DNA of 64,000 nt, from IMG/VR virus record IMGVR_UViG_3300050014_000823, positions 1-64,000 of that record. One strand, written 5' to 3'. Both the position numbers and the translations under genes were made by a program. Shown here piece after piece: positions 42,876 to 60,653 of the stretch. A model generated the notes under the pieces. That model saw only the letters and a list, made by a program, of their open reading frames with translations. It did not search any database and was not told where the DNA came from. The first letter of the stretch is position 1. Each line of letters opens with the position of its first letter.

Positions 42876-42951
42876 TGTAACATTTCTCCCTGTATTACGT
42901 ATAATCACACACAGACAGCGTAAGTAGTACTAACCAATACACATAAGCAAT

Positions 42952-45339
42952 ATGAAAACCAACACAGGAACATTAAACTCACAGACAGTTGAAGGAACAA
43001 TCGGAACACGTCAGATGGGCATGGATGCCAACTCACAGGCGATTGTTTTTCAGATGTTTACAAAGAATATCTACAGTAATGCAATAGGTTCGGTTGTTAG
43101 GGAGATAACTTCGAATTGTTTTGATTCACACACAGAGGCAAAGATTAATCCTCTTGAATCACCTGTTATTATACGCAAGTCATTTGACCCTATTACTAAG
43201 AGTCATTATATAAGTTTCCATGACTTTGGTATGGGTATTTCACCAGACAGGATGGATAACGTTTACGGTGTATTCTTCAAGAGTACAAAGGCAGGTGACA
43301 ATGAGCAGATTGGTGGCTTCGGAATAGGTGGTAAAACACCTTTAGCATACAAACGCAGTACTGGTTTTGGCGAAGGCGAATATGACAATTCATTCTCAAT
43401 CATCACAAACTTTGATGGCATACGTTATGAGTATATAGTTTTCGAAGGCAAGAAAGGTCCAGAATACACTGACCCGATAATGTCTGAAACGACTGAACAC
43501 AATGGCACAGAGATAAAGATTCCTGTACTTGAAAAAGACATTACAAAGTTCAAGTCAGAAATGGTAAAGCAATTGTACTACTTTGAGAATGTTATCTTTG
43601 AGGGTTTTGTTAATGACCCGGAATATCCGACAGCAACAGAGAATTTGCTTACCAATGCTTATCAGATTGTCAAAGGCAAGACTTTCTTCTACAGAGGCAA
43701 TGATTACTCACAGTACACACATGTTTGTCTTGGCAGGGTAGCTTATCCGATTAATTTTGGATTACTTGGCTTAGATGGTTCAGATTACCGTTTCCCTGTA
43801 GCAATTAAACTGGAAATCGGTGAGATTGGAGTTACAGCCAGTCGTGAGACACTTGACTATAGTGAACAAACAATCAAGGTGTTAAAGGTTAAACTTGAAG
43901 CAGTTAAAGCAGAGATAACTGCAATGTTAAGTAAGCAGTATGAAAACATTGTGACCTTAGAGGATTACTTCAAAGTCAAAAATCAGTTCGGAGTATTGTA
44001 CATGCCGAATGGTGGTAGCTTTAAGGTTGGTGAGATTATCAAACAGAAAGACGTTGACTTCTCGAATTTCAAATATGGCTTCATGAAGATGCCGAATGAC
44101 AAACAACTCTTTAACTATTTCTTCGAAACCAAATTGTATGGTAAGAAGATTAAGAAAAGTAAGAAGAACAACTATGAGTATGATGATGAGGGCAACAGGA
44201 TTGAGGAAGGCGAATTGGTTGGTGGTTATGATACGATTATCAACAAGCATAATGTACTGTATCATTTCGAAGGTGAATTTCAGCGCAAACTTGTTAAACA
44301 GGCATGGTTAAAGAATCAGTGTACGACTTTCTACACAGTTACAACCAAGAATATTGTCAACAGATTTGAGACACGCAGAATGTCAGACCTGTTCAATGTA
44401 GACGATAAAGTTGTTGAGAGAGGTCTTGACGGTCAGCCAACACTTGATGCAAACGGTCAGCAGATTCCTACAGTGTTCATGAAAGGTTTACTTGAATTAC
44501 AACAGGAGTACTTTGAAATCATCAGCAAGTATTGTACAGCCTATGATGCTGTTGTTGTCCCGGAAGACTTCAAAGAGAGTCGTAAGAATGGTGCAAGGCG
44601 TTTGTCACAGGAGTACAAGAACATGACAATACCTGTTAAGATATTCGGTGGCTACAGAGGCACATTCAGAGTTAAACTTGACAGTCTTTTCAAACTTCAC
44701 ATTCCTATCTTTTACGGAACAAAGGAGAATGATTATCAGTTGAGACAGGCAAAAGAAATGTTCGGCATATTGTTCGAAAGCAGTAGCATCATTGGCAAGT
44801 ACAACGAAAGAACACATGAGTTCAGATTTGACAATGGCAAGAAAGGCATAATGTTCTTACAGATATCACAGGGTAATGTACGTTACATGGAGTACTGTCA
44901 ACAGGCATACCATATCAACGAATTCAAAACGAAAATGCTGAAACGTAAGGAGAATGCAGTGATGGAATACTTTCAGTCACAGAATTTCGTACACAAATTT
45001 GATACTGTCAATAGCTTTTACAAATCAAAAGCATTTGGTAAGGTTGCTCCGGAATGGCAGAAGAAGACCGATAAGATTAATGCTTTCATAAAGAAACAGT
45101 ATGTTGGTTATAACAATAACTGGGACAGGTACAGGTCAGAATTAAGTCGTTACTTTGACATCAACGGCATTGAAATGACAAAGGAACAACAGAAGTTCGA
45201 AGCTATCATCGAAGAATTCTCAGAACTTGAAGAAATGAATTCAGAGACAATGAGATACTTAGATGTCCCAAGTTATGACCTTGATGATGAGAAGCACACA
45301 GCATTTTGGGCAATAGTTAAGAAAGTTTTAGTGTACTAA
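42952..45339 (+). CDS. rIIA: rIIA-like protein with GHKL/Hsp90-type ATPase N-terminus
   Basis: IYSN....VREITSNCFDSH, DFGMGIS, STK....QIGGFGIGGK, NGTEI.IP, ASRE.L.Y. Confidence 0.8.
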   Translation: MKTNTGTLNSQTVEGTIGTRQMGMDANSQAIVFQMFTKNIYSNAIGSVVREITSNCFDSHTEAKINPLESPVIIRKSFDPITKSHYISFHDFGMGISPDRMDNVYGVFFKSTKAGDNEQIGGFGIGGKTPLAYKRSTGFGEGEYDNSFSIITNFDGIRYEYIVFEGKKGPEYTDPIMSETTEHNGTEIKIPVLEKDITKFKSEMVKQLYYFENVIFEGFVNDPEYPTATENLLTNAYQIVKGKTFFYRGNDYSQYTHVCLGRVAYPINFGLLGLDGSDYRFPVAIKLEIGEIGVTASRETLDYSEQTIKVLKVKLEAVKAEITAMLSKQYENIVTLEDYFKVKNQFGVLYMPNGGSFKVGEIIKQKDVDFSNFKYGFMKMPNDKQLFNYFFETKLYGKKIKKSKKNNYEYDDEGNRIEEGELVGGYDTIINKHNVLYHFEGEFQRKLVKQAWLKNQCTTFYTVTTKNIVNRFETRRMSDLFNVDDKVVERGLDGQPTLDANGQQIPTVFMKGLLELQQEYFEIISKYCTAYDAVVVPEDFKESRKNGARRLSQEYKNMTIPVKIFGGYRGTFRVKLDSLFKLHIPIFYGTKENDYQLRQAKEMFGILFESSSIIGKYNERTHEFRFDNGKKGIMFLQISQGNVRYMEYCQQAYHINEFKTKMLKRKENAVMEYFQSQNFVHKFDTVNSFYKSKAFGKVAPEWQKKTDKINAFIKKQYVGYNNNWDRYRSELSRYFDINGIEMTKEQQKFEAIIEEFSELEEMNSETMRYLDVPSYDLDDEKHTAFWAIVKKVLVY

Positions 45340-45629
45340 ATATCAAATGTCCCCTGTAAATATTGCAGGGGACATTAAAATTTACCTACAATGAATGAGT
45401 TAAAAACATACCTTCATAAACACTTTAGGTCACTACGCCAAAATAGCTTGTGATGAAGCACTTAGGTTAGAGAGAGAAGGCAAGAAAATGTCATGGTTGA
45501 AGTACAGGAAGATGAAGGCAATAGTAAGATTATACTTGCATGTAAATATTTGGTTTTAACTGTAACATTCCTGGCAGCTTTACGTATAATCACACAGACA
45601 ATTAAATTACTAACTTAATACTAATAATA

Positions 45630-47407
45630 ATGAAAAGAGCAATAATTTTCTTAGTTGTATTTACACTATTCGTAGCATTTCTTGGTTACAGTGTTTTTGA
45701 TTCACGAAGAAAGGCAACAAATGAACTTGCTCTTAAGTACGTCAACTATAATGACATCAATGGTGATATGATATTTACTGATGATGCAGGTGGCAGAGTT
45801 GTACTTACCTTTGAAGAACAGAGGAATGTCATTGATATCTTCGATAAAGCCGATGAAATTACAGAGATTTATATAAAAGAAAAGATTGAGAATTATATTG
45901 AGCGTGAATTGTTTACTTACAATGACAAGGTTTACAAGTATTATTATGTGTTTGACAATAAGCATGTCAAATCATACATATCAATTACTACCAATCAAGT
46001 TAAGGCTAATATGGAACGTCTTGGCGTTGATACAAAGCATTCGTTATTGGCGTATGATGCGTTTGACAGAACCGTTATGGTAAGCAGAATAACTAAGTTC
46101 ACTGATTATTTCAGCAGATACAAATTAGACCATTTGAGGCGCAGAAGTAAGACAGAGATAGCAAATCAGAAAGTCGAGAAAATACTTGAAAATAAACCAG
46201 TAAAACTGTAACATTCCCGGAAACTTTTCGTATAATCACACATGGCAAGCAAAAGAAAAAGAAGTACTGATTACAGAAGGGAATTGAAAGACCTTCAAGC
46301 ACAGGAGAAAGCACTGAGGGCACGCATAATTAAACATGCGGAAGAACTTTGTCAGAAATATCCGGGTGTGCGCATCGGTGAATTCTGTGTTATTGACTAC
46401 ATAAGATTTGTTGAAGACAATAACCTTACAGAAGCATTTATGGTAATGGAAGCCATTGAGAAAGACCTGGAAGCAAAGCATCCGCATAAGCAGACAGCAT
46501 TTGAATTTCCGACAGTTGTTCCTGCACCGCCAGTAGGTGAAAGATTTATCATCAGTGATGGTGTGGCTTATACAAGAAAATCGGAAGAAGAGGCTATGAA
46601 GTGTTCTAAAAGTCCCGATGGTAAACATCAGTTCGGGTTTGATGGTTCAACCTGTAGTTATTGTGGCGCAAATGTAGCATACCTTTAAAACTAAATATAT
46701 GAGAATTAAAATAAGTGAAATAGACCTGTTGACATTCAACAATTTAAAGGGTAAAATGCTCTTGAAGTCAGACACGCATAGATTATATGTCATCGCAGAC
46801 TTCAAAACAGAGGTTGTGGAAGAAACTGTGATGGAGAAACCTTCATTGTTCAAGAAAGCAGTACCTGTTCAGAAGAAACAATTGTACTTGACAGGTGTGA
46901 ATGTACACGCATGGCATTCAACAGGTAAATTCCTCGGTGACTTGACCGATGATTCAGCAGAATGGTTACTCCGGAGAGACCTGTACAGAATTCGACAGAA
47001 TTGGATTGACTTCTGTGACCAACTCAAAGCATTCGGCTTTAAAATAGCTGAAATCAATCCAGAAGCATAATTTTTAAACCTTAAAATCATATACTATGAA
47101 AGCTACAATTAAATTTATTGCATTGTTCACAGGATTTCTTTTTTCGCTGTTCCCTACAATGGCAGCATTTATATATCTGCTTTCCGGGAAGCAAGCATTC
47201 ATAGACTTTATTACAGGAATATCCTCAGAAAGATTTTGGCTGTTTGGTATACCATTGTTCATTGTAACCATGACAGCTTCTGTTTTAACTCTTATGGAAA
47301 TGATGTACTTCAAAAGTCCAGCTAAACAGGCAAAACCATTGTCCGTTGATGACCCAGACCTTGAGAAGAAAATTAAGAGATTAAATATGTTGGAAACCCA
47401 ATACTAA
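45630..47407 (+). other. four hypothetical CDS (45630-46211 and 47096-47407 membrane; 46242-46688; 46699-47070)
   Basis: ORFs after promoters 45561 and 46207. Confidence 0.65.
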
Positions 47408-47474
47408 TATAACTAATTTATAATTTGTCATGTTTATAAGAATCTTTTTCATCTTGCTCAGTATTTATGTCAAT

Positions 47475-48263
47475 ATGGCAAATAATACTATGGGAGCAAA
47501 CGTAAAATTCACAGAAAAACAAAAACAAATTGTTGTTGATATGTACGCCAAATGTGGCAGTCCAATGTCAGAAATTATTGAAAGATGTAAATCAGATATT
47601 CCTGAAGATATTAGATTTTCAATTAGTAGAGAAACAGTTTATAAATTTTTAAAGGAAAAAAACATTCCGTTAATTAGAAAAACAGGAGTTAAACATAATT
47701 TGATTGGTAAGACATTTGGTTATCTAACGGTAACTGATATGGCACAAACAAAAAAATCGGGTAGACTACATGAATGGAGAGCAATGTGTAGATGTAATAA
47801 TTGCGGTAAAGAAAATGTCGATGTTCGTCCACAAGCATTATTAAGGGGTGCAACTACTTCTTGTGGATGCCGCAGAGACCTATATATAACTAATAGTGGT
47901 AAAAACAATAAGCACTATAAAGGATATGAAGGATTAAATGGCACATATTGGGGAAAAATAAAAAAACGTGCAGAAAATAGAGGACACACATTAATTGTCA
48001 GTATTGAATATGCGTGGAATTTATATTTGCAACAAGATTGTAAATGTGCACTTACTGGATTACCAATTGGATTTGGAGTAGCAATTGCTAATAGAAAAAG
48101 TAGTGATACCACAGCTTCTTTAGACCGAATAGATTCTTCGAAAGAATATGTCGAAGGCAATGTACAATGGGTTCATAAAAATATTAATATTATGAAAAAT
48201 GTATATGACCAAGATTATTTTATACATTTATGTGAATTAGTTACTAAAAATAAAAAGGCATGA
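47475..48263 (+). mobile_element. HNH-like homing endonuclease
   Basis: LIGKTFGYLTV..C.C..CG..TTSCGC and SLDRIDS.K.YVEGNVQWV. Confidence 0.85.
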
Positions 48264-48718
48264 CAGAAATTAAATATATTATTGGGGACGCTACTTATCC
48301 ACAAGGAGAAGGAAAGAAAATCATATGCCACATTACCAATGATTTACGCTATTGGAACAAAGGATTTGTTCTTGCCCTAAGTAAGCGTTGGTCTGAACCC
48401 GAAAAGGTTTACAGGAATATGCCAGACAGTCAATTGATGCTCGGTAAGGTAATGATTGTACCTGTGGAGAATGACATTATGGTTGCCAACATGGTTGCAC
48501 AGAAAGGTGTTGGTAATGATTCCAATGGTCAGCCACCAATCAGGTATGGTGCATTAAGAGCTGCACTTGCAGAGGTCAATGATATAGCATATCGTACAGG
48601 TGCAACACTTCACATGCCTAAAATCGGAGCAGGTCTCGCTGGTGGTGACTGGAATATCATTGAGAAAATCATCGAAGATGTTGCAAGTGTTGATGTTACA
48701 GTTTATACATTAAATTAA
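48260..48718 (+). CDS. macrodomain ADP-ribosylhydrolase (TARG1/DarG/Poa1p-like)
   Basis: GDAT.P, HITND..W.KGF, VANMVAQ, HMPKIGAGLAGGDW. Confidence 0.88.
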   Translation: MTEIKYIIGDATYPQGEGKKIICHITNDLRYWNKGFVLALSKRWSEPEKVYRNMPDSQLMLGKVMIVPVENDIMVANMVAQKGVGNDSNGQPPIRYGALRAALAEVNDIAYRTGATLHMPKIGAGLAGGDWNIIEKIIEDVASVDVTVYTLN

Positions 48719-48719
48719 T

Positions 48720-49069
48720 ATGAATATAATAACTATTTGTGGGAGAACTTACTCCGTTGAAGGCAATAAGATTGTCGTCAAGAACAGTCCAAAGAAGCGT
48801 CCCGAACTTGGCAACTATGTCATGGTTAATAATGTTGTCATTGAAAGCAACATTGTGAGAAGGATATTAAAGTAACCTTCGAAGGTGACTTAGCATCCTT
48901 AGATTGTACCACATGTACCATTAACGGCAATGTACAGGGTAATGTCGATTGCACCACGATAAAGTGTGGTGATGTTGGCGGTGACATTGATTGCACTACA
49001 ATTAATTGTGGTGATGTGAAAGGTGATATTGACGGAACAACTGTCAATTGTAAAAAAATAAAGATGTAA
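48720..49069 (+). pseudogene. frameshifted beta-solenoid repeat gene
   Basis: MNIITICG... stops at 48873; the -1 frame continues KVTFEGDL..DCTT..GNV.G.VDCTT.KCGDVGGDIDCTT to TAA 49067-49069. Confidence 0.7.
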
Positions 49070-49235
49070 ATGTAAATCGTATTATGATTTTACATATATT
49101 TGTATTCGGATTTACTAACAATTAAATCTACGCCTATGATTAAGAGATAACCATTGCCCGTCCGTTAGCATTATGATAATGTCCACAGGACCTAATCATA
49201 CAAAAATAATTATTGAACCCATATAATAAACATAC

Positions 49236-49649
49236 ATGTCCAAAGAAGAGTTTATTACAATTGACTTAAAACTTCCTAATCACTGCAACGAACTATCCAA
49301 AGCAGAGGAAGTAATCGAAAAATACAAAAAGAGATTCGAAATAATGCAGATGCAAAGAAGCATCAATGATGCAAGTCATGTAGAATTATTCGAAGAAATC
49401 GTCCGATGCCTCACATATGTAGGCAAACTATCTGAACCCGCCTTTGCAATTGAAGACCAACTTGAAAAAGAGTATGTGTTAAAATTTAAACATGCTCCTG
49501 CACTTGGTAAGCAACTCTGGCTTGAACACTATGACGAAGTTCACCACCCTTATACCATTTTAAAGAATCGTTGTTACAGACTGTTGGAACTCCTTGACCA
49601 GGAATACTTTGACAGACACGGTAAACAACCACCTAACTGGAAAATCTAA
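49236..49649 (+). CDS. hypothetical protein
   Basis: 137 aa ORF before bidirectional terminator. Confidence 0.7.
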   Translation: MSKEEFITIDLKLPNHCNELSKAEEVIEKYKKRFEIMQMQRSINDASHVELFEEIVRCLTYVGKLSEPAFAIEDQLEKEYVLKFKHAPALGKQLWLEHYDEVHHPYTILKNRCYRLLELLDQEYFDRHGKQPPNWKI

Positions 49650-49662
49650 CGATACATAAAAT

Positions 49663-49695
49663 AAAAAAAGCACTGTGATTAACAGTGCTTTTTTT
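49663..49695. terminator. bidirectional terminator at convergence point
   Basis: AAAAAAAGCACTGT...ACAGTGCTTTTTTT. Confidence 0.85.
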
Positions 49696-49713
49696 ATTTA
49701 GCTTGTCCGGTAG

Positions 49714-49747
49714 CTTCCCCACTAACTTCCCCACTAACTTCCCCACT
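49714..49747. repeat. 12-bp tandem repeat CTTCCCCACTAA x about 3
   Basis: read directly from the sequence. Confidence 0.85.
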
Positions 49748-50187
49748 TACATCTGTGAAAAATGCCTTCTCATTATTCTTTCGAAGAGCTGCAGAAGGTC
49801 AGTATCATTGCACTTTTGAAAGCTATAATTACTGATGTGAATATTATCGTTGGTAATAAAGAAATGCATCCAACGCATCGAGGACTTGTTGAAGCCTTGA
49901 TGCTCTTCCTTAAGTTCGTATATCCTGTTTAACAACAGTTTACGCATTCCAATTCCTGGCAGCTTCTGAACAACTGCAGGGATAAACAGGTCATCAAATT
50001 CAAGTCCTGTGAGATATTTCCAAGTAACAAGTTTATACTTAGCTTCCAACATGGTTTCATTATTCAACCTACCTTTAGGGAATACAATGCAATGCCTTAC
50101 ATTACCTTTTGTGAAGGCAATATAGGTTTGGAGATTTGACATAACAAATCCCTGACTTTTCAGATAATCATAGAGTTTCTTTTTCAT
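49747..50187 (-). CDS. hypothetical protein
   Basis: 146 aa ORF. Confidence 0.65.
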   Translation of the reverse strand: MKKKLYDYLKSQGFVMSNLQTYIAFTKGNVRHCIVFPKGRLNNETMLEAKYKLVTWKYLTGLEFDDLFIPAVVQKLPGIGMRKLLLNRIYELKEEHQGFNKSSMRWMHFFITNDNIHISNYSFQKCNDTDLLQLFERIMRRHFSQM

Positions 50188-50193
50188 CGTAAT

Positions 50194-51789
50194 TTATTTA
50201 AATATGTTCCAAAAACTTTTCTTTTCTTTCTGTCTTTCAACCATTCTGACTTTCAGGTTTGCTGTCATAACTTTCAAGCAATCGACATACCAACCATTGA
50301 GTTTTGCTTGGTTAAATGCTTGTATGTCATTTGCTTTCCACTCGGCAAGCAAACCATATCTCCCTGCTGATTCAACACATTTCTCTTTAGTCCAGAAGTC
50401 CGCAGGTTTCCTTGAGAGGAATTCTGCACGCACGTCTTTTATGTCAGCCATCGTGTAGGTCCTGAGTGCACCGTCTTTCTCGTATACGTCTTTAAAGAAG
50501 TCAAAGACAGGTAAATTTGAGAAGTCAATAGGTTCATAAAAACGGTTGGAGTTTCCACCAACGGTCTTTTTGGTTTTATAGTCGTATTTCTTCTGACCTT
50601 TAATAACAGGTATTTTAAGGTCATCGAAGTTTTTGCCATTAAATTTCATGAAGAATTCTTCACTGCTCATTGCCAAAACACCTGTCATAACGTACTTATA
50701 ATAGTCTTCCTTGTCTCTCGGTGCTATCTTGAAGAATAACTTTTTAATGCCATCAGGATGCTTTCTTACTACTCGTGAGAAGAGTTGATATATCCTGTCG
50801 ATGTTCTGTGAAGTTGACATATCAACGATATTTACGAGTCTTGTATAGCTAAATCCAAGTATGCCTCTGCCTACAACGATAAGTACAAGGCAATCATCAT
50901 TCGATGTGAAATATTCAATCTGTGATGAGTCTAAGTCAATATCAGAAATGCTCAATGCAGACTTAATTCCAACTGCATCGAAGTACTGTTTAATCTGCAT
51001 TGCCTGTGCCTGTGATTTACAAGCAAACATAGTCTTACGAAGTTCGGTAAGAGTCTGTTTCCAAGTTCTGATGTTTTTGTTATCTGTTATCTTTGAGATA
51101 ATCTTACCTAATAGTTCGTCAAGAGTTTTCCGGGTTTCATTATCTCTTATTTCGATTTCACCCTTTAATTCTTTCTCACTGTTGTAGTCTTTGATAATAT
51201 CGAAGTTGTAACTACTTGTTGCTATTTCAACTCTAACGTCTGCTGCCATACCTTCATCGTAAATGGTAAGTAAAGGAACAGCTATAATCGAGTAGTTCCG
51301 GAGTATGAAAGGTGAGGGTGTTCCTGTAAGCAGTAGTTGTTTACTTGGCTTAACCATCTTAATTATGTCCTGTACCATTTCAGCGAAGTAAAACTGATGT
51401 GCTTCATCAACAACTAATAAGTCGATGTGTGGTAAATTTTTACCACAAAGGGTCTGAGGTAAGCAGACGTTAACCTGTGATTTATGTTTGAATTCTGTGA
51501 ATTTTTCCACTAAATTGTAACTAAAGCCGGGATGAACTTCATTAAGAACATCATTGAACTGTGTGCGGAGAATGGTTGTACCATGTGTGAGGACTAATAC
51601 CTTTGCGAGAGGATGCTCGATAAGGTAGTCTTCAATGCTGTATATAGCCATGATAGTTTTACCTGCGGAAGGACAAGCTGCTAAGATAGTTACATCTTGT
51701 TTGCTCATACTTGTCTTGATTTTCTGCAGAACATCTGACTGATAATTCAGTGTCTTTAATCCTCTATATGTAAACCAATCTTTCATCAT
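50194..51789 (-). CDS. SF2 (DEAH/ResIII-like) helicase
   Basis: ACPSAGKT Walker A, VVDEAH, LLLTGTP, Q.FSRVVR; promoter 51795-51824. Confidence 0.85.
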   Translation of the reverse strand: MMKDWFTYRGLKTLNYQSDVLQKIKTSMSKQDVTILAACPSAGKTIMAIYSIEDYLIEHPLAKVLVLTHGTTILRTQFNDVLNEVHPGFSYNLVEKFTEFKHKSQVNVCLPQTLCGKNLPHIDLLVVDEAHQFYFAEMVQDIIKMVKPSKQLLLTGTPSPFILRNYSIIAVPLLTIYDEGMAADVRVEIATSSYNFDIIKDYNSEKELKGEIEIRDNETRKTLDELLGKIISKITDNKNIRTWKQTLTELRKTMFACKSQAQAMQIKQYFDAVGIKSALSISDIDLDSSQIEYFTSNDDCLVLIVVGRGILGFSYTRLVNIVDMSTSQNIDRIYQLFSRVVRKHPDGIKKLFFKIAPRDKEDYYKYVMTGVLAMSSEEFFMKFNGKNFDDLKIPVIKGQKKYDYKTKKTVGGNSNRFYEPIDFSNLPVFDFFKDVYEKDGALRTYTMADIKDVRAEFLSRKPADFWTKEKCVESAGRYGLLAEWKANDIQAFNQAKLNGWYVDCLKVMTANLKVRMVERQKEKKSFWNIFK

Positions 51790-51841
51790 ACAGTATTATA
51801 CGTAAAGATTGAAATAATGTTACAGTTTGGTGCATATAAAT

Positions 51842-52095
51842 GGAGAAACCCTCAAAGAACCTTACGCTTCTGGCAGTTTCCGGTTTCCCTTGCGTGTCTG
51901 TCAGTTTCCAGTTCTAAGAAGGTCTCTCTATCCGATTTCCTGTGGATGAGGAAACATCCCTCGGATAACCATTTCCGTCAGAGTGGCATGTTGTGTGAGC
52001 AGGACGCTACCTCTGCCTATGCCTTCCTCAGTGGGTTGGCATGTTCGAATCGCTCTATTACTATCACACCTTTCGTTTCTCCTGCCCGAAGGCAA
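51842..52095 (-). ncRNA. unclassified GC-rich structured RNA
   Basis: GGAGAAAC/GTTTCTCC closing stem, TGCC-TTCG-GGCA hairpin, TATCCGA/TCGGATA, nested stems; no credible ORF. Confidence 0.6.
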
Positions 52096-52115
52096 ATTAA
52101 CGGTTGGTTTTCTTG

Positions 52116-52247
52116 TGGTCGAAAAGGGAATTGAACCCCTATTATTTGCGTTGTTCCTACGCACTTGTCACACTGTTGTCCACATGTCGAGACAGGGAAC
52201 ACCCATCCGTATGGCAGTGAAGCATTCAGCCTTATGCTAATTCAACC
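52116..52247 (-). ncRNA. tRNA-like RNA with expanded, branched anticodon region
   Basis: acceptor GGTTGAA/TTCGACC-A, D-like AGCAT/ATGCT arm, T arm AGGGG-TTCAATT-CCCTT; promoter 52258-52287. Confidence 0.7.
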
Positions 52248-52371
52248 GATTATACGTATTATACGTATAAGCCAGGAAAATGTTACAAAAAATACAGAAA
52301 AAATAAAGGGTGTCGTTCTGGTTAAACAATTCACCCTTTTTCTAACCTTAAAACTAATCTATGAAAAAAAC

Positions 52372-55300
52372 CTATTTCTTTCGTATCACCATGATACTGT
52401 CGTTCTCTACAAGAATTTCTTTAACGAGAATACTACGTACTCCCTCACCATTTTGTGGATTAATAATAATGGTTGTCTGTTGAGTCTTACCCACAGGATA
52501 GGTAATAGAATTAACATTACCGCCAGGAAGTATGGCTACTTTAACACTGCCAATACCTGTTGACACTGTATAAATTTTCAGACCTTTGAGTTCATCGGGC
52601 AACCCTGCTTCATTACCATTAAGTATCTGATTTGTTTTGCCGGGATTACAACTTGCCATAATGACAAGTAATAGAATTGCGAATAGTTTAATTGCTTTCA
52701 TATAAAATTTATTTAATTAATGTGTCATAATATGCGCTTCTCCAACCCATGCCATCAGTAATTCTTTGGGCATACCAATTGAATTTTCTCCAACGGAAGA
52801 TAAACCAAAAGGTTATTACAATATAGTGTTTTGGTTCTGCATAGCTGATTGCTCCGTATGCTCGTTTGATTTTATCTGTGTCTATTGTTATCATCCCATC
52901 ATCCCCATATTTCTGAATATTGTTGACCGGAAGTTATCTGCAGCACTACTGTCACTACTACTGTAGCCACCACCAACTGAAACGTTATCATAATCAATAG
53001 GTTTCTTACCTTCCTTAACTCTTTCTTCGTTTCTTTCTTTGCGCTGTTTTTCAATCTTCTTACCAAATCTGTAAGAGTCTATGAGGATATAGGCGAAGAA
53101 ACCTAATATCAGCACACCACACAATATGTCAGTCATGTCAAACATTGAGTACGTTATCAATTTTGTCACGAATTTCTGTTTTTATTTCTTTAAGTAATGC
53201 TTTACGCTTTTTGAGTTCCTTTTCATCTTCTTCATGCCCGTAATCGGCAGACTCTGCTTGAACTCGAATATTTTTGGTGGAACTACCATCATATATACCA
53301 TCATCAATAAGATGATACATACTTTCAAGTTCGGCTAAGTTTAACTCTCGTAGTCTTGGATATTTCATTGTATATTAAATTTACTGTTCCCAAGGTTCTG
53401 GACCAAACATTCCACCACCCCAAGCAGGTTGTACCCTACGTGGTACAGGTTGTGGTTCGTAGTCACTTATTTCAATTCTGTGGTTCTGAGGAATATCGAA
53501 CTGCTGTATCTTTGCTTTGCTGATAGGATATCTGACCTGTCTCGGCTGTTGACTGCAACCATGCCAATGTTTGCGGGTTTGGTGTAAACTGCCATTTAAC
53601 AGATATTCGTCATAAATAGCTGTGCGTTTGTCGAAACCCTTGTCATAGCCTTCATCGTAAGGAAATTTCTGACGGAGTATCTGTACACCATTAAGGAAGT
53701 AAAGTAAGTAGTTTCTTTTCTTACCATCAGCACACTTCTTACTGCACTGAACTTTACATGTGAGTTTGTATTCCATATCAATCGTCATAAGATTTTTTAA
53801 GTCTAACATCATCATCGTCTTGAGTAACAACACTATCATCGTCACTGTTCAAGTGTCTTTGAGTCATCGACTTTTCTTCCTGTTCTTTCTTCTTGACAGG
53901 AGTTTCTTCTTCTTTGTCGTTTTTACCGTACCACATTATCTTAATCCTTCTTCGGTTATTACTTCTTTGATTACTGCTAAGACTTGATTCATTTCAGAGA
54001 GTTTTATGCGGTCCAAAATATCTTCACGTTCAGAAATTAACAAGTCGTTATCCCTGTACTCAACTTCGTAATTCCAGTTCTTAATCCATACAATTGCCTT
54101 ACGCAAAAGTATTGTGGTCTCGACCTTTAAATTACTTTTATGACTTCCGGACTTAACAAGTTTTCCGATAATTTTTTCCGAAATTTCCGTTTCCTTTTCT
54201 TTTAGTTGGTCATTAATTTCCGCACGGGTTCTTCGCACCTGTTCTTCACTATGAAGTGCAGACTCACCTAAAAGAATTAAATCAATTGCTTTCGGACTAT
54301 CAGTCTTTGTTGCCATGACCTTAGTATATCAGTGCTTCGTCAAGACCACGTTCAATGTTTTTCATACCATCGGGTCTGAAATTAGACACTGAATAAGTAG
54401 GACGTAGTTCATCACCCTTTTTATCACTAAAAAGTACACCTGTGTTGGAGTCAGTAAGTTCCTCAACGACTGCTTTAACGCTGTCGGGTTTAAGATAGAC
54501 GATATCACCTATCTTATACTTGTGCTTGACAGATGATTCAGTATAATCACTGCTGTTCTGTCCACGTTTGTCGATGTTTCTTGATGTGCAACTGTTAAGC
54601 AGTATTACACAAAGTAGTAGTGCTAAAAATTTCGATGTTTTCATTAGAATTTCTTTTTTACGTAGGTTAATACATAAGCGATAATTACGAGTACAAGTCC
54701 GATAGCTTGTTGAACCTTTACATCGGCACGTGCAGCTTTCTGCATTTCATGATAGCCGGGATAGTTACTGATATGAACTGCACAATAGATTAGCAGTCCA
54801 AGTCCGATTACCGTAAAGGCAATCATAAGAATGAGTTTAATGTTCTTTTTCATAGTATATGTATTTATTCGAATAAAAATTTCTTGTCTTCAGGTATCAC
54901 TCCAAAGGGACACCAAGTACCAACGCTTTTATAACCAAAGCATTCATTTGTTATTTCACAACCCGGAGAGCAACACCCCCAAGCATTACAACCTGTGTTA
55001 TATTTACACATAATACAATCAAGTACTTTAACGTGTTGTGTCCACTCTTTGCCTCTGGTTGTAATTACTTTATCTTCCATGATGCAAATATATAATCAAT
55101 AATCGAGAATTCCAAGTGCTCTACGAATTTCATCGGCTTTCATTTCCTTGCCATTCTCATATGCTTCCTCCATCTTATTGGTTATGATAGTTGTAAGAGT
55201 ATTGGGATTAACACGTTTAAGAAACAACCTGTTGAGATAGTTGAAGATTTTATACTCAACTTCTCCGTTAATCTTCACCTGTTCAAGCAGTTCTGTGAGA

Positions 55301-58300
55301 CGTTTTCCTGGCACAGTGTCCTTGAATATTTTTATACTACCGCCCAAAATAAGGTCATCAATCCAATATGAATTACTGTTTTCCTTGATATCAACCTTAG
55401 TGTCTGGACCTTCATAACACTTATATGCACTGCAAATGTGCGGTCCTTTTCCAATTATTACATCGTCCCACATAGTATATAAATTAATCAGTTAACCAAC
55501 CAAATACATTATTCATGATGTGTGTGCAACCATCACAGATTTCCTGTTCTTCTGTAGAGAACACAAATTTGAATCCTTTGTGTCTGCGAGACTTTAAGAT
55601 TTCGTCAATCTTAACAGTTTCAAGTGGAACTTTGCAGACTTCTGCATATTCTTGTCCAATTCTGTAGCCATCAAGAACGCTAACAGGACCACCACCGAAG
55701 TAACCCAATACCCAAATGTTTCTTTTCTGCTCAGTATCATAGTACTTGCGAAAGTCGGCATTCTTAAGGTCAAGATTTTTCACCTTTGGTATACGGTCTT
55801 CAACTTTGACGATGATGTTGCAATATTCGGCAACCCAATCGGTTTCACTACCACTCATTAAGCGGACAATAACTCTGTTATTATCCATAAAGCCATATTC
55901 AATGACTTCGGCATTCGGATGACAAACTTTACCATCAATACCTTTAAGGTCAACTATGTCGCCTTTGCGGAGTCCGTAGTATCTACTGCGGGTTTCGTTA
56001 TCAAATGGTTTCTTCATTACTTCTTTGAATATACTGATTTAAGCAATTCTTTGTGTTCGGCTTCTGTACCGATAAATTCCAAGTAGAGTTTCTGTCCGGG
56101 TTCAATGCGAATATTTTCATCACTGATATCGAATTCTTGCCAACCACGCATTTCAATTACCATTAGTAAACCTTTGCGGAGTTCTGCAATCTTAATACGT
56201 TGCTGATGAAACTTAATGGCATTTTTACTATCCTCAATGATATAATCCCAAATATGCTCATTGTCATATCTTGCAACGACTTGTTTATTATCCATTTCCA
56301 TGTAAGAGACTTCCCTCAAGTCATGTGCAATGAGTTGACGGATTTCCCATTGTGGAAAACTTCTGTGCATTTCTGTTTCTTTCATTATAGTACTGTTTTA
56401 ATTAAGTCTATTGCATCGGCAATGAATATTTGCTCATTGCTTTTCATTGCTTCTTCCTGCATATATTTTACTGCTCCCATGCGAAGATTTTCTCCGGGTT
56501 TATTATCATTCCATAATTCTTTTACAACTCCCTGTACTAAAGGTGTAAACCAATTGGGATATACTAATGGTTTCTTACCGTCACCCAACTTACCACTCAA
56601 CACAAGATAATTTAAATAATTAAGTGTTCTCATATATAGTGAGTGTGTCATGTTTCTGGTTGCAAGTGCACCCAAAACAACTTCAACAGTAACAATGCTT
56701 GCTTTCATACTTTGATAATATGTCATACCATCGTTCATTCTGTGCGACTCGATTATACGAGCTGCGTTTTCCATTGCATCTAATTTGTGTTTCATTTTAT
56801 TCAGTCATTACACAATAACTACTACCCTCATAATAATATCCACCTTCTCCATAGGCAATACACCTTATGAAGCATTGTGTGAATATAAGTCCGTTTACCT
56901 CAAAGTCATAGTACCCATCCTCAAATTCCTGTTCATCATGAAAGAACAGTTGTGGCGCATAACCTTTTATTGGTGTATATTCAACATACGGACGTTTCCT
57001 GTCGTTGATAAACTCAAGTACTTCATCAGTGTTGATGTCGAGAAATTTGCTTTCTAAAATTTTCATATCATTTGTACTTCTTTATAAAAGTGCATATCTG
57101 TCATTAATCTCAAGAAAATTTCAGTATGAACCTCATTTTCATAGGGGTCGAAACCACTAAACATCTGATTCTTTTTAATGAATTCATAGGTTTCGTCTTC
57201 ACAGAGTAATCCCCAAACAAAATCAGTGTTCCAATTGATTTTTAGCCTGGCATCAGTGAATCTTGTGGCAGACCTTAAGTCGTCTTTGTTAATACCAAAA
57301 AGGACGTGATTAGGTCTTGTTCGCCCTTCTTGGCTTTTTTCTGTAATTGCAAATACTTCTTTCATGTTACTTCAAGTTTTCAACTTTGGTTCTGAATACG
57401 TTGTTAGTACTGTCAGATAAAAATCCATACTCGAATTTAATCTTTGGGAGTTTCAATGCCCTGTTGTAGATGTTATTCGGGAACGTATCAAGCATAGTGT
57501 TATTCTGATTTGCAATAAGCTGGCAGACCTTTTCAATGCTGAAATATCCTTCACGCTGTTTGGTGATGTAGTTTGAGAGGTCAGCATAGAATGCTGTGAA
57601 CTGATTATAGTCGATATCCGGATATTTGCTTATCCATTTCCATGAAAGGTTTTCACCATCGGCAACATTTGCCATAATGATTTTGGTAACTTCAATGAAC
57701 ACGTCTTTATTCATGTTGGCTATCTGTGCCTTAGTCTGATAGGTTTTCCAGAGTTTATCGTAGAAGCCAAGTTTCTCTTCGACTTTCTGCTGATAGGTAT
57801 TCTGATATTTCTTTGAAGTATTATACATAAACACCGATTGCTTGTAGATGGTTTTACCAAATTTAGTAATGTTTACAACGACTATAAGTGCAATTGCAAG
57901 CCATATCCAACGTTTCCAACGGATAGGTTTCTTTGTAGCAGGTTCTTTTTCGTCTTCATCCCTGTGAGTACTTCTGTACTGATAGTTATCCCTGTCATAA
58001 AGAAATTTAAATGGTGGACTGTCGTTACTGAATTCCCAAATGGCATAGATAAGATAAACTATGTCAAATATGACCAAGAGTGCATTGAGTGCCATGTGAA
58101 TCCAACCATAACTTACGTATGAATGATATGAATCTTTAACAAAAGTATCGTTAAAGATTTGAGTTTCACTGAACATCCAAAAGTTTAGAAAAGTAAGTGC
58201 AATGCCTAAGAGTATTAAGACAATGACAACCATCGGACGGGTAATTTTAAAATTTTTCATAATTTATTTAAATTTATTGGTTATTTTTTTGCGTATTGTT

Positions 58301-60653
58301 TAACAACTTCTTCTGCAGTCATTTTGTTTCTTGAAAGCCAACTCAGACTGAAATAGTACTTGCTTCGTTCAGCCAATATAACTTCTAATGCTTTAATGGT
58401 ATCTGGATGTTGTGGTACTAATCCTGTTTGTCTGCATGCCTTTTTAATCAGTGCTTGATATGCTTTGGTATTATCTGACCTTTTGGCTTTCTGACCTGCC
58501 TTCTGTGCTTCTGAGAGCAACACATTATAATGTCTATCTGAGCGTACTTCGTCTTCATTGAGTCCTGTTTCTGACATTATCTTGCGTAATAGTGCAGCTT
58601 CATTCTTGTTAGGATAATGCTTAGTAGGGTCATTGGCAATCTTCTTTGCCTTACGTTCAGTCGTGTATGTTCTGCTTTCTTGGCAGTCATCATCATAGTC
58701 ATAATAATAACTCATTGTCTTAAATTTTTTCTTTGTTTTCCATATACCACATCATAAACTCTGCTACCGCAATCCACGCTAATTCAATTGGCTTATACTC
58801 CATAGACTCATCATTGACGTAAGTGTTGATATTCATAGAATCTGAGATAAGTCTTTCACCCTTATATTCTTCTCCAGCACAATTGCCTTGATTGATTGCT
58901 ATATGTACACCACCGCCACCACAAATGGTAACGTTGATAGGAAATCCACTAAAATTTCCTTTTACTTTTATTCTGATTTCAGTTATTTTAACAATAACAG
59001 GCATCAGTGCATCCCAAGACTCGTGAAATTTAAGACTATAGTGATATCTTATAGATTTATCGGATTGATAGTTGTAGGTGTATTTACCGTCAATAAGGTC
59101 TTCGCCTTCGGTCCAGACATCTTCAAACTCCGACACATCATCGCCACAGAAATCAACGTAAGAAACTGACGTAGCCTTATCGAAATGTCGCCATCCAAGG
59201 AACTTTGCAATTTCGGTATTATATAATGCTAATTTTTCTTTATAAAATTTTTCCATAATTATTCAATATGATATTCCCAATCGTTCCACATGCAGAGCAC
59301 ATAATACTTATCAATGTAACGTGCCCAATAACCTTTATGTTTAATCCATACACGGTAGACTACGAGTTTGTGTTCATCGTAATATGGGTCATCCTTATAC
59401 TGTGTCAAGGTAGGGTCATCAAGTATATAATCAATATGAACCTTACGAACTCTCTTAATGCTGTCCGTATGTGGAGTTTTTATATTATATGATTTACCTG
59501 CCTGGATTTCCATAGTGCAAATATAAGTAAATTTTCTACTTTATATGCATTATACGATAATAATGTGAAAATGTTACAGCTTCCCCCCATTTTTTTCATA
59601 GCTTCCCTTAAAAAAAATCTAAGTGTGTGATAATGATAGGATTAAAATTTGGCAGCTCCCCCCCGTTTTCACGGCAGCTCCCCTCCTTTTTTAATTTGTC
59701 ATGCCAGTAATCTGGAATGTAATGACAAGAAGTGCGAAGTCTCTTTTGGATAAACCAAGTTTTTTTCTAAGTTTATTTGAGGTAGTTCTTTCGAAGATAA
59801 ATGAGATAAGTGTGAAGCCACCGAAGCCAAAGATAAGAAAGAATGCCAATGCTTTATCAACTGTCCACATCCAATCGTTGTGACCGAAAGCATTTGCATT
59901 ATAGATGATGCCAAGTACAGCAATTAAAAGTATAAGTGGAAGTATTGCAAATCTTGCAAATGGTACACCATAGAGTTTATGCATACGAGTTATCCAAGGA
60001 AGTCTATAAGCATGTAATTCTTTCTCAATTAGGTCAAGTTGTTCTGTAGTAAAATCGAGTTCTGTTCCCGATATATGTACTGTTGCTCTACTGCTTTCCA
60101 TTGTTATCATATGATAGTTGTTTGCTATAAATACTTATGTTTGCAAACCAAACCAAATACCCTTTGGTTTTAACGTAGGTCTGATAGCTTCCAAAATTTT
60201 AACTTCAAACCTATTATCACCCGAATTTGGTGTCTCGGTAATTTCGTCAAAAGACCAACCGCAGCAATCTGTTGGCTTTGAAAGACATACATAGGTATTA
60301 CCATCAAATGTGAATTTCCTTACAGTGTCTCGGAGTAGTCCAATGGGATAGTTAGCTTTTCTCCAATCCTGAAAGTCTTTCGTACTACTGGCAACGACAC
60401 CAACTATCTTACCCTTTGGCTTTCTGTCATCCATGAGTTCTGTAATGACCAAATTGACAGCATTGAGACAATCAACATTCCAAATGGTGCTGTGATTCGG
60501 ATAAAAGCAATACTGTCGCCATCCCGGATACCATTTGATTTCACCAATAACTTCGTCATGATGAATATTTATAATGAAAATTGTCTTGGTTTTACCTGTG
60601 TCTTTGACCACATCAAACCTCAAATACTTTGTTGTTTTTAATGTTGTTGCCAT
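52372..60653 (-). other. run of about 25 short hypothetical CDS, including two lipoprotein-like (52372-52701, 54321-54644) and membrane proteins
   Basis: coupled ORFs; lipobox-like MASC and LNSC; promoter 59549-59578. Confidence 0.7.
57367..58260 (-). CDS. membrane protein with LemA-like C-terminal domain
   Basis: three TM segments, then YQQKV...WK..Q...R..YF.......NN.ML.TFPNNI. Confidence 0.5.
   Translation of the reverse strand: MKNFKITRPMVVIVLILLGIALTFLNFWMFSETQIFNDTFVKDSYHSYVSYGWIHMALNALLVIFDIVYLIYAIWEFSNDSPPFKFLYDRDNYQYRSTHRDEDEKEPATKKPIRWKRWIWLAIALIVVVNITKFGKTIYKQSVFMYNTSKKYQNTYQQKVEEKLGFYDKLWKTYQTKAQIANMNKDVFIEVTKIIMANVADGENLSWKWISKYPDIDYNQFTAFYADLSNYITKQREGYFSIEKVCQLIANQNNTMLDTFPNNIYNRALKLPKIKFEYGFLSDSTNNVFRTKVENLK

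What the first reader, a model, noticed from the sequence alone, without database searches (positions are those of the whole stretch)
52116..52287. 132-nt tRNA-like RNA with a branched insert in place of the anticodon loop
Seen on the minus strand right after an ECF-type promoter: acceptor, D-like and T arms. The anticodon-position stem CACTG/CAGTG encloses extra hairpins (CCAT-ACGG-ATGG, TGTC-TC-GACA) and is followed by a long variable arm TGCGT/ACGCA. There is no 7-nt anticodon loop. Inference: a tRNA mimic or intron-containing tRNA. With the armless tRNA, the suppressor and Pth2 it points to broad manipulation of tRNA biology.
Basis: partly seen in the sequence, partly recalled or inferred. 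Interest (0 to 1): 0.68.

Follow-up and report, generated by a model that had tools for sequence, protein, structure and literature searches.

The report
Phage tRNA-shaped RNA that cannot decode
A 299-kb environmental phage and at least seven relatives carry a conserved RNA gene that folds like a tRNA but has a long bent 17-base-pair arm where the anticodon arm should be, and it is followed in the same transcription unit by a second, knotted RNA, which makes the pair a new kind of phage non-coding RNA of unknown function.

Summary
The tRNA-like anatomy is real. On the minus strand, 52247..52116 holds a 7-bp acceptor stem, a canonical D arm and T arm, and discriminator A. No CCA is encoded. The "branched insert" is not supported. 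Eight homologous loci show one unbranched 17-bp arm with three bulges on its 3' strand and a 7-nt apical loop. Covariation is strong: 97.9% of cells are paired, against 37-49% in slid controls. Twelve pairs carry two-sided changes, against 1-3 in controls. An intron-containing tRNA is rejected, because ARAGORN's "anticodon" bases covary as a helix and its calls disagree between homologues.

The RNA follows a phage promoter motif that occurs 29 times in the genome. In all eight loci it is followed by a roughly 170-nt pseudoknotted RNA and a terminator hairpin, with no conserved ORF. Rfam has no family for either part. The phage's tRNA and tRNA-like genes share an N73-CAAA trailer, and the phage encodes a CCA-adding-type domain.

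Best reading: a non-decoding tRNA mimic that is matured by the tRNA pathway. Its molecular partner is unknown.

The parts
52258..52286 (-). Phage promoter: -35 GTAACA (52286..52281), 17-nt spacer, -10 TATAAT (52263..52258). CGTATAAT is duplicated at 52256..52249.
   Evidence: Consensus scan. The motif GTAACA-N-CGTATAA occurs 29 times in the 299-kb genome in gene orientation. The same motif lies upstream of the RNA in L004, L005 and L020, and as the variant GCAACA in L008 and L009. The phage has two sigma70_r2 genes. The transcription start is inferred at about 52251 and was not measured.
52116..52247 (-). tRNA-like RNA, 132 nt including discriminator A52116. No CCA is encoded; the trailer is CAAG.
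   Evidence: Model R1 scores 118.7 bits here and 150-189 bits in seven other loci.
52241..52247 (-). Acceptor 5' strand GGTTGAA, pairing with 52123..52117 (TTCGACC).
   Evidence: Pairs 1-3 (G-C, G-C, U-A) and A73 are invariant in the eight loci. Pairs 4-7 change in a compensatory way: GGUUGAA, GGUCUAU, GGUCUCA, GGUCUU.
52221..52238 (-). D arm AGCAT-AAGGCTGA-ATGCT, with the GG of the D loop.
   Evidence: Invariant in all eight loci apart from one loop base. It aligns to the Rfam tRNA consensus UAGC..GG..GC.
52171..52219 (-). Long arm in the anticodon-arm position: 17 bp (5+4+1+2+5). The 3' strand carries bulges ACAA, ACA and U. The apical 7-nt loop GTGTTCC is at 52202..52196.
   Evidence: RNAalifold consensus and pair counts. 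CACTG/CAGTG becomes CACAG/CTGTG in relatives, and the distal stem has GAUGG/CUGUC, GACGG/CCGUC and GGUGG/CCACU. The apical loop is always 7 nt, but its sequence varies: GUGUUCC, CUUUUUC, CUAAUAC.
52147..52163 (-). Variable-region hairpin TGCGT-AGGAACA-ACGCA.
   Evidence: Present in the window. Relatives have two hairpins here totalling about 55 nt, one of them capped by GAAA. The region is therefore free to vary in size, as a variable arm is.
52124..52140 (-). T arm AGGGG-TTCAATT-CCCTT.
   Evidence: Canonical T loop UUCRAUU. The stem changes GG/CC to AA/UU in L005 and L006.
52084..52115 (-). Trailer and linker: CAAGAAAACCAACCGTT, then a small UUCG-capped hairpin.
   Evidence: CAAAA.CCAACCGU is conserved in the homologues. 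The N73-CAAA trailer is shared with the phage's canonical suppressor tRNA and its other tRNA-like elements. L005, L006, L008, L009 and L020 carry an extra domain of about 110 nt here.
51915..52083 (-). Second RNA module: a pseudoknotted structured block.
   Evidence: Model R2 scores 149.4 bits, single copy in the genome, and is present behind the tRNA-like RNA in all eight loci. Helices P1, Pb, Pc and Pd and an H-type pseudoknot each show 3-6 compensatory variants. It has no Rfam match. A 155-nt contig of a relative lies on 51899..51995 in a metatranscriptome.
51834..51924 (-). Terminal hairpin with a U-rich tail (putative terminator). Its 5' strand is the conserved GAGAGACC at the end of the block.
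   Evidence: Folds of relatives give z-scores of -4.8, -6.4 and -3.2, each with a U-rich tail. The window's version is weaker, z = -0.7, with a 60-nt insertion in the loop. The simple terminator scanner finds nothing because the loops exceed 8 nt. This is an inference.
51795..51823 (-). The next copy of the same promoter motif, in front of the helicase gene (51789..50194).
   Evidence: The helicase is ResIII/DEAD.

Best explanation
This is a real, selected, phage-encoded non-coding RNA gene. Its product has the body of a tRNA: a 12-bp acceptor/T stack, and a D loop and T loop able to form the elbow. It cannot decode, because a rigidly conserved, bent 17-bp arm replaces the anticodon arm.

It is the 5' module of a promoter-to-terminator unit of about 415 nt. 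The 3' module is a pseudoknotted RNA of about 170 nt.

Proposed mechanism, with the basis for each step:
1. Transcription starts from a phage-specific GTAACA/CGTATAAT promoter, probably read through a phage sigma factor (inferred).
2. The tRNA body recruits the host tRNA maturation pathway. RNase P trims the leader, which is 17-60 nt long in relatives. A cut after A73 separates the two modules. CCA is then added by the host enzyme or by the phage's own CCA-adding-type domain (inferred).
3. The result is a stable tRNA-shaped RNA. Its invariant D arm and proximal long arm form a sequence-specific surface for a tRNA-recognising partner, and it stays out of translation. My best guess is that it acts as a mimic or decoy for a host or phage tRNA-binding protein (speculative).
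For: - **Anatomy.** The parts and their coordinates are.
- **Distribution.** The RNA occurs in eight distinct loci from at least seven samples.
- **Covariation.** 97.9% of cells are paired against 37-49% in slid controls. Twelve pairs have two-sided changes against 1-3, and 0 of 500 shuffles reach the observed values.
- **Purifying selection.** The D arm plus long arm is 86-87% identical between the window and L005/L006. Four-fold degenerate sites of the neighbouring helicase gene are 50-52% identical.
- **Uneven constraint.** The D arm and proximal arm are invariant, while acceptor pairs 4-7 and the T stem change by compensation.
- **Cannot decode.** The arm is 17 bp long, the apical loop sequence differs between close relatives, and no intron removal leaves a loop with U33.
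- **Same 3' context as a real tRNA.** The N73-CAAA trailer is shared with the phage's canonical suppressor tRNA.
- **CCA addition.** The phage encodes a PolyA_pol head domain plus its RNA-binding domain.
- **Promoter.**
- **Downstream module and terminator.**
- **Non-coding.** There is no conserved ORF and no Pfam hit on either strand.
Against: - No expression or end-mapping data exist for the tRNA-like module. The one RNA library laid on the region covered only a relative of the downstream block, as a contig, which cannot show ends.
- Processing by RNase P and RNase Z, CCA addition and stability are all inferred from resemblance.
- The partner is unknown and no linked protein gene is conserved; the neighbours differ between loci.
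- The acceptor/D-stem junction varies by 1-3 nt between homologues. That is unusual for a true tRNA core and might distort the L shape.
- Only eight sequences from one narrow clade are available. Helicase relatives at 74% identity or less showed no copy within the 6-8 kb searched.
Confidence: 0.6

Rival explanations
1. The tRNA-like module has no function of its own. It is a processing and stability handle, like a plant mitochondrial t-element or a gammaherpesvirus tRNA-miRNA unit, and serves only to define the 5' end of the downstream pseudoknotted RNA. That downstream RNA would be the real effector.
For: The two modules are always adjacent in one promoter-terminator unit in all eight loci. 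The trailer is conserved. A second, anticodon-arm-less tRNA-like element lies 6 nt after the stop codon of a small ORF at 32182..32238, which looks like punctuation. RNase P is known to cut many tRNA-like non-tRNA substrates (PMC11143913; t-elements are described in PMC1920247).
Against: A handle needs only the acceptor/T minihelix and the elbow. Here the most conserved parts are the D arm and the 17-bp arm: 26 nt are invariant, and 86-87% identity compares with about 50% at neutral sites. The acceptor and T stems, by contrast, drift by compensation. The phage's own armless element shows that the lineage keeps a tRNA-like element without any arm in this position.
Confidence: 0.2
2. The two modules work together as one device. 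The downstream RNA docks on the tRNA-like RNA, or on host tRNAs with A73, through its invariant single-stranded UGGU, which is complementary to a 3' ACCA. This is the logic of a T-box antiterminator bulge or the RNase P L15 loop. Docking would decide between the terminator hairpin and read-through.
For: UGGUUA is invariant and unpaired, lying between a short helix and helix Pc. The conserved GAGAGACC next to Pc is the 5' strand of the terminator stem, so alternative pairings are conceivable. A73 is invariant.
Against: The Rfam T-box and bacterial RNase P models find nothing, even at E = 10. The would-be antiterminator helix is only 2 bp. Complementarity between the apical loop and the block exists in some homologues but at non-homologous positions and at chance level. 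Both partners are invariant, so covariation cannot test the contact. A fresh promoter follows the unit, so read-through is not needed for the next gene.
Confidence: 0.07
3. It is an intron-containing tRNA. ARAGORN -i calls tRNA-Trp(CCA) with a 38-nt intron. On this reading, splicing would yield a decoding tRNA.
For: The phage lineage is unusual in its tRNA biology.
Against: The predicted loop UGCCAGU has G33. Bases of the predicted anticodon loop, including the third anticodon base, covary as a helix, and the anticodon would read CCA in the window but CCU in relatives. Calls on the homologues disagree in isotype and in intron position, and two homologues give no call. No split of the insert gives U33, which can be read directly. 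All bulges lie on one strand, so there is no bulge-helix-bulge motif. A 39-nt insert cannot be a group I intron, and no intron family matches.
Confidence: 0.03
4. It is a decaying tRNA pseudogene, or a chance resemblance, with no function.
For: The tRNA model score is sub-threshold and the single-sequence fold z-score is unremarkable.
Against: The RNA is conserved in eight loci, with compensatory changes in every variable helix. Sequence identity is far above that of neutral sites. The position behind a promoter is also conserved.
Confidence: 0.02

Closest known systems
Canonical tRNA (Rfam RF00005), especially class II tRNAs with a long variable arm
   Same: A 7-bp acceptor stem. A D arm with U8, A14, GG and A21. 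A T arm with a UUCRAUU loop and the G53-C61 pair. Discriminator A73. An extra hairpin in the variable region. The same 3' trailer as the phage's real suppressor tRNA.
   Different: There is no anticodon stem-loop at the canonical distance; a 17-bp bulged arm stands in its place. The score is 19.1 bits against a gathering score of 29. The acceptor/D junction varies by 1-3 nt. The variable region reaches about 55 nt in relatives.
Murid gammaherpesvirus 68 tRNA-miRNA-encoded RNAs, and MALAT1/mascRNA (recalled from memory, not tested here)
   Same: A viral or cellular tRNA-like module is transcribed in one unit with another functional RNA and is thought to be separated from it by tRNA-processing enzymes. 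The tRNA-like product is not used for decoding.
   Different: Those are eukaryotic systems. In the herpesvirus the tRNA-like part supplies a Pol III promoter. Their tRNA-like parts have short or ordinary anticodon arms. Here the partner RNA is a pseudoknotted domain of about 170 nt, not a microRNA hairpin.
Plant mitochondrial t-elements and other tRNA-like RNase P substrates (PMC1920247, PMC11143913)
   Same: tRNA-like folds are embedded in longer transcripts and could be cut by RNase P or RNase Z to create RNA ends.
   Different: t-elements are minimal and poorly conserved in sequence. This RNA has an invariant D arm and a large conserved extra arm.
tmRNA tRNA-like domain with helix P2
   Same: An acceptor stem and T arm are combined with a long helix in the anticodon-arm position, and the molecule is associated with pseudoknots.
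   Different: The tmRNA tRNA-like domain is formed from the two ends of the molecule around the mRNA-like part, lacks a D stem and carries G3-U70. Here the cloverleaf is contiguous, has a full D arm and has U3-A70. The tmRNA models and ARAGORN do not call it.
Bacterial Y RNAs of the YrlA type (recalled from memory)
   Same: A non-decoding RNA with a tRNA-mimicking module and a long bulged helix in the anticodon direction.
   Different: In YrlA the RNA ends lie in the long Ro-binding helix and the acceptor-like stem is closed, which is the opposite topology. The phage has no Ro/TROVE gene and there is no Rfam hit.
Small stable tRNA-like RNAs of T-even phages (cited through the reference list of PMC11143913; details recalled from memory)
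   Same: Phage-encoded stable RNAs of unknown function, longer than a tRNA, that sit among tRNA genes and are matured by tRNA-processing enzymes.
   Different: There is no detectable sequence relation, since the phage collection gave no match. Those RNAs are not known to carry a 17-bp arm or a linked pseudoknotted partner.

Membership tests
tRNA (RF00005) | Score at or above the curated gathering threshold (29 bits), or a call by ARAGORN in default mode | tested here: not met
   19.1 bits, E = 1.5. Not listed at gathering threshold. ARAGORN default finds nothing in the window or in seven relatives.
tRNA (RF00005) | 7-bp acceptor stem, D arm with GG, and T arm with a UUCRAUU loop | tested here: met
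   The acceptor and T stems covary.
tRNA (RF00005) | 5-bp anticodon stem closed by a 7-nt loop with U33 and a conserved anticodon | tested here: not met
   The 5-bp stem continues into 12 further base pairs. The apical loop lies 17 bp out and varies: GUGUUCC, CUUUUUC, CUAAUAC.
Intron-containing tRNA | Removal of the insert leaves the same canonical anticodon loop in all homologues | tested here: not met
   ARAGORN -i gives Trp, Asn, Ser, Leu, Leu, Ile and two blanks. No split yields U33. The putative anticodon bases covary as a helix.
Intron-containing tRNA | A recognisable splicing signal: bulge-helix-bulge, or a group I intron core | tested here: not met
   All three bulges are on the 3' strand. 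The insert is 39 nt and no intron family matches at E up to 10.
tmRNA | G3-U70 alanine identity pair, a tRNA-like domain formed by the two RNA ends, and a tag reading frame | tested here: not met
   The pair is U3-A70 and the cloverleaf is contiguous. No tmRNA call comes from ARAGORN or from Rfam on the window element. Relatives give only 10-16-bit T-arm hits.
Y RNA (YrlA type) | A Ro/TROVE protein partner, and RNA ends in the long helix | tested here: not met
   No PF05731 match in the phage genome. The RNA ends lie in the acceptor stem.
T-box leader (for the downstream block) | Match to RF00230, plus Stem I with a specifier and an antiterminator bulge UGGN | tested here: not met
   No RF00230 match at E up to 10. 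Only an invariant UGGU resembles the family, and the candidate antiterminator helix is 2 bp.
Bacterial RNase P RNA (for the downstream block) | Match to RF00010, with P4 and the conserved regions CR-I and CR-V | tested here: not met
   No match at E up to 10.
tRNA-like processing module with a linked RNA (works like, not a curated family) | A tRNA-like fold and a second structured RNA in one transcription unit | tested here: met
   Promoter, tRNA-like RNA, block and terminator hairpin are present in all eight loci.
tRNA-like processing module with a linked RNA (works like, not a curated family) | Cleavage by RNase P and RNase Z, and CCA addition | not testable with these tools
   Only indirect support: the shared N73-CAAA trailer with a real tRNA and a phage CCA-adding-type domain.

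The most novel reading that the evidence does not exclude
The tRNA-like RNA and the pseudoknotted RNA form a self-contained, phage-borne tRNA-sensing device. The downstream RNA would bind the processed 3' ACCA end of the tRNA-like RNA, or of host tRNAs, through its invariant UGGU. Binding would switch its terminal hairpin, coupling phage early or middle gene expression to the state of the host's tRNA-processing or charging machinery. This would be a T-box-like logic that arose independently in a phage, with the phage supplying its own ligand.
Probability: 0.07. Interest if true: 0.9.

Novelty: new variant of a known kind. Interest (0 to 1): 0.6.

Why it matters
tRNA mimicry is well known in RNA viruses and in a few cellular RNAs. 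Conserved, non-decoding tRNA-shaped RNAs in DNA phages are barely described, and standard tRNA finders and Rfam do not detect this one.

It comes with a clear covariation-supported structure, a defined promoter, a linked second structured RNA, and a genome that carries other odd tRNA-related items: an arm-less tRNA-like element, a suppressor tRNA next to Pth2, and a giant protein with a CCA-adding-type domain.

If it proves to be a decoy for a tRNA-targeting defence or toxin, or a scaffold that exploits tRNA maturation for stability, it would be a natural example of the tRNA-scaffold design used in RNA engineering. It would also be a new entry point into how large phages handle host tRNA biology. 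Both RNA modules are short and well defined enough for direct biochemical and structural work.

Tried and rejected
- **Known families.** Rfam at gathering threshold on the window and on the whole 299-kb genome, and at E up to 10 on the locus and on two relatives, gave no family for either module. T-box and RNase P models searched directly also gave nothing.
It is not conserved.
- **The intron reading.** Rejected.
- **Protein-coding reading.** The ORFs on both strands have no Pfam hits and are not kept in L005.
- **Wider relatives.**
  - Four DNA patterns against IMG/VR gave 0 hits.
  - Two patterns against GTDB species genomes gave 0 hits.
  - blastn and tblastn against the deposited phage collection gave no match.
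  - Helicase-anchored loci at 74% identity or less (L011-L015, L040, L041) have no copy within the 6-8 kb fetched.
  - Whole-record searches of relatives were not possible.
- **Contacts of the apical loop.** The window shows a perfect 6-bp match between its apical loop and its own variable-hairpin loop. The match is not conserved, and matches to the downstream block fall at non-homologous positions, so no contact is claimed.
- **Pb loop pairing with GGUUAU.** Dropped, because it conflicts with the covarying outer pairs of Pc.
- **Ro/Y-RNA idea.** There is no TROVE gene.
- **Expression.** The one RNA library laid on the region covered only part of the downstream block of a relative, so this is no verdict for the tRNA-like module.
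- **Host.** Not identified. Cluster look-ups gave no names.

Full report
**What the window is.** The window is the first 64 kb of a 299-kb, about 91% complete virus record. The DNA comes from a peat metagenome, and partial matches occur in sediment, lake and soil runs. Under the standard code, open frames of 150 aa or more cover 83% of the genome. The finding lies in a 583-nt gene-free stretch between a 109-aa ORF (52701..52372, minus strand) and a ResIII/DEAD helicase gene (51789..50194, minus strand). G+C there rises to 44-48%, against about 36% around it.

**Checking the observation.** On the minus strand, 52247..52116 reads as follows:
- acceptor GGTTGAA
- two U
- D arm AGCAT-AAGGCTGA-ATGCT
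- U
- CACTG, 39 nt, CAGTG
- TGACAAG
- hairpin TGCGT-AGGAACA-ACGCA
- AATAAT
- T arm AGGGG-TTCAATT-CCCTT
- acceptor 3' strand TTCGACC
- discriminator A
- trailer CAAG

By itself this is weak. The Rfam tRNA model gives 19.1 bits against a gathering score of 29, with E = 1.5, and places a 74-nt insertion in the anticodon arm. The fold energy is only 1.6 sd below shuffles. ARAGORN in default mode reports nothing.

**Relatives.** Homologues of the neighbouring helicase led to contigs that carry the same non-coding region: L004, L005, L006/L007 and L020. A D-arm DNA pattern found three more in JGI metagenomes: L008, L009 and L010. A covariance model built from seven sequences scores 150-189 bits on the relatives and 118.7 bits on the window.

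On the model-based alignment, 97.9% of cells form standard pairs, against 37-49% when partners are slid by 1-3 columns. Twelve pairs show changes on both sides, against 1-3 in the slid controls. None of 500 column shuffles reaches any observed measure.

Every helix that varies does so by compensation:
- Acceptor pairs 4-7.
- CACTG/CAGTG, which becomes CACAG/CTGTG.
- The distal stem of the long arm.
- The T stem, where GG/CC becomes AA/UU.

The D arm and the start of the long arm are invariant. Between the window and L005/L006, this region is 86-87% identical, while four-fold degenerate sites of the adjacent helicase gene are 50-52% identical. The feature is real and under selection.

**What the insert looks like.**
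- The consensus fold, which is also the window's own minimum-energy fold, is not branched. The 5-bp stem continues through CCAT/GTGG, an A-U pair, CG/CG and GATGG/CTGTC to a 7-nt apical loop. That makes 17 bp in all.
- The 3' strand carries bulges of 4, 3 and 1 nt, which should bend the arm to one side.
- The apical loop is always 7 nt. It reads GUGUUCC in the window, CUUUUUC in L004 and CUAAUAC in the other six loci.
- The variable hairpin of the window is replaced in relatives by two hairpins totalling about 55 nt.

**Not an intron-containing tRNA.** With introns allowed, ARAGORN calls tRNA-Trp(CCA) with a 38-nt intron. Several points count against it:
- Its loop has G33.
- Bases of its predicted anticodon loop, including the third anticodon base, are exactly those that covary as a helix.
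- On the eight homologues the program returns Trp, Asn, Ser, Leu, Leu, Ile and two blanks, with different introns.
- No division of the 39-nt insert leaves a 7-nt loop with U at the second position.
- All bulges lie on one strand, so there is no bulge-helix-bulge motif.
- The insert is far too small for a group I intron, and no intron family matches.

**Surroundings.**
- The RNA follows GTAACA, 17 nt, TATAAT directly.
  - The longer motif GTAACA..CGTATAA occurs 29 times in the genome, in the orientation of the genes. One copy lies just before the helicase gene.
  - The motif stands upstream of the RNA in most relatives, leaving leaders of about 17-60 nt.
- The phage has two small sigma-70-family genes.
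- Behind the tRNA-like RNA comes a conserved trailer, CAAAA.CCAACCGU. Five relatives also carry an extra domain of about 110 nt there.
- In every locus a block of about 170 nt follows.
  - The block is single-copy in the genome.
  - It has a long-range helix P1, hairpins Pb, Pc and Pd, and an H-type pseudoknot between the Pd loop and the strand behind it. Each is supported by three to six compensatory variants.
  - It ends in a strong hairpin followed by U-rich sequence. The z-score is -3 to -6 in relatives and weaker in the window, where the loop carries an insertion.
- No ORF is conserved and none has a Pfam hit.
- The unit is therefore a non-coding gene of about 415 nt with two structured modules.
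- A metatranscriptome holds a 155-nt contig of a relative's block. Nothing was seen for the tRNA-like module, and contigs cannot show RNA ends.

**Context in the genome.**
- Model R1 also picks up weaker tRNA-like elements at 32072..32242, at 97356..97464 and at 222648..222758. The Rfam tRNA model reads 32182..32238 within the first of these as a tRNA without an anticodon arm, at 36.9 bits.
- All of these elements, and the canonical amber-suppressor tRNA at 1380..1451, lack an encoded CCA. Their discriminator is followed by CAAA.
- The phage encodes a PolyA_pol head domain with its RNA-binding domain, of the CCA-adding enzyme type. It sits inside a 2688-aa protein that also has GNAT and 2H-phosphoesterase domains.
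- It also encodes a Pth2 next to the suppressor tRNA.
- There is no Ro/TROVE gene.

**Mechanism.**
- *Shown:* a conserved tRNA body, a conserved 17-bp arm in place of the anticodon arm, a promoter motif, a linked pseudoknotted RNA, a terminal hairpin, and a 3' trailer shared with a real tRNA.
- *Inferred from established knowledge:* RNase P, RNase Z and CCA-adding enzymes recognise the acceptor/T stack and the elbow. The transcript should therefore be trimmed at G52247, cut after A52116 and given CCA. That would release a stable tRNA-shaped RNA and a separate 3' RNA.
- *Inferred from the pattern of constraint:* the D arm and proximal arm are invariant while the other stems drift. This points to a sequence-specific partner that reads the inner face of the L, which is more than a processing handle would need. 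The length of the arm and the variable apical loop make decoding implausible.
- *Speculative:* the partner is a tRNA-binding protein and the RNA acts as a mimic or decoy.

The first three acceptor pairs and A73 are invariant, so charging by a synthetase cannot be excluded.

**Comparison with known systems.** It works most like viral and cellular tRNA-like modules that are cut away from a linked RNA, such as gammaherpesvirus tRNA-miRNA units, mascRNA and plant mitochondrial t-elements. It also resembles engineered tRNA scaffolds. It is not a member of tRNA, tmRNA, Y RNA, T-box or RNase P families; the defining features were tested and not met. No relative was found in IMG/VR patterns, in GTDB genomes or in the deposited phage collection.

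**Verdict.**
- The locus is a new variant of the tRNA-like RNA theme, with good structural support and an unknown function.

Noticed in passing
window 52298..52371 (-): The 3' untranslated end of the 109-aa ORF, including its terminator, matches the Rfam family FopS (Bacteroidetes paralogous sRNAs). The score is 36.6 bits, E = 0.0045, below the gathering score of 56. GibS also matches weakly. This may hint at a Bacteroidota host or at a phage copy of a host sRNA.
   Followed up: no
window 32182..32238 (+): A tRNA-like element with acceptor, D and T arms but only about 7 nt in place of the anticodon arm and variable loop (Rfam tRNA 36.9 bits). It starts 6 nt after the stop codon of a 72-aa cysteine-rich ORF (31957..32175) and is followed by ACAAA and a promoter-like motif.
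   Followed up: partly
G000:C1:97361..97464 (-), outside the window: A third tRNA-like RNA. It has a perfect 7-bp acceptor stem, a D arm, a 5-bp stem with loop CGGGAAG (G at position 33), a 37-nt variable region that shares UGACA with the studied RNA, a T arm and the trailer UCAAA. ARAGORN does not call it.
   Followed up: partly
G000:C1:222600..225130 (-), outside the window: A cluster of odd tRNA-related elements. One T arm plus acceptor strand is followed by its own complementary strand, giving weak hits to the permuted tmRNA model (19.7 bits). There is a partial tRNA at 27.5 bits, and two low-scoring tRNAs at 224141..224211 (anticodon CAU, 44 bits) and 225059..225128 (36.4 bits). ARAGORN misses all of them.
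   Followed up: partly
G000:C1:175965..184028 (-), outside the window: A 2688-aa ORF combines a GNAT acetyltransferase domain, a PolyA_pol head plus RNA-binding domain (CCA-adding enzyme type) and a 2H phosphoesterase/Acb1-like domain. This looks like a giant RNA-end-modifying or repair protein.
   Followed up: partly
window 574..59577 and on to about 120 kb: The promoter motif GTAACA-N15-CGTATAA occurs 29 times. It is often followed by a conserved leader GTAACCAAAACA without a Shine-Dalgarno sequence. Two small sigma-70-family genes lie at 30974..31177 (+) and 146228..146425 (-).
   Followed up: partly
window 1380..1453 (+) and 1572..1793 (+): An amber-suppressor tRNA (anticodon CTA, 62.9 bits) lies directly upstream of a Pth2-family peptidyl-tRNA hydrolase gene (25 bits). 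Coding density gives no clear sign of genome-wide TAG recoding.
   Followed up: partly
window 52196..52202 and 52152..52158 (-): In the window only, the apical loop of the long arm (UGUUCC) is perfectly complementary over 6 nt to the loop of the variable hairpin (GGAACA). This suggests a possible fold-back kissing contact. Relatives show only 3-4 nt of such complementarity.
   Followed up: yes
L004..L020, 5-20 nt upstream of the tRNA-like RNA; window 51852..51860 (-): A conserved box GTTCTTTGAA (GTTCTTTAA in L004 and L006) lies just 5' of the tRNA-like RNA in all seven relatives. It is missing there in the window, where GTTCTTTGA appears instead in the 3' strand of the terminal hairpin.
   Followed up: no
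window 50194..51789 (-) and its homologues: The helicase is 531 aa here and in close relatives. Many homologues at 50-58% identity are 770-920 aa long and carry additional domains. L041 carries two diverged copies on one contig.
   Followed up: no
G000:C1:110219..110251 (+), outside the window: A match to the Rfam motif DUF805b above its gathering score (39.6 bits against 35.6). A truncated weaker copy lies at the end of L008.
   Followed up: no
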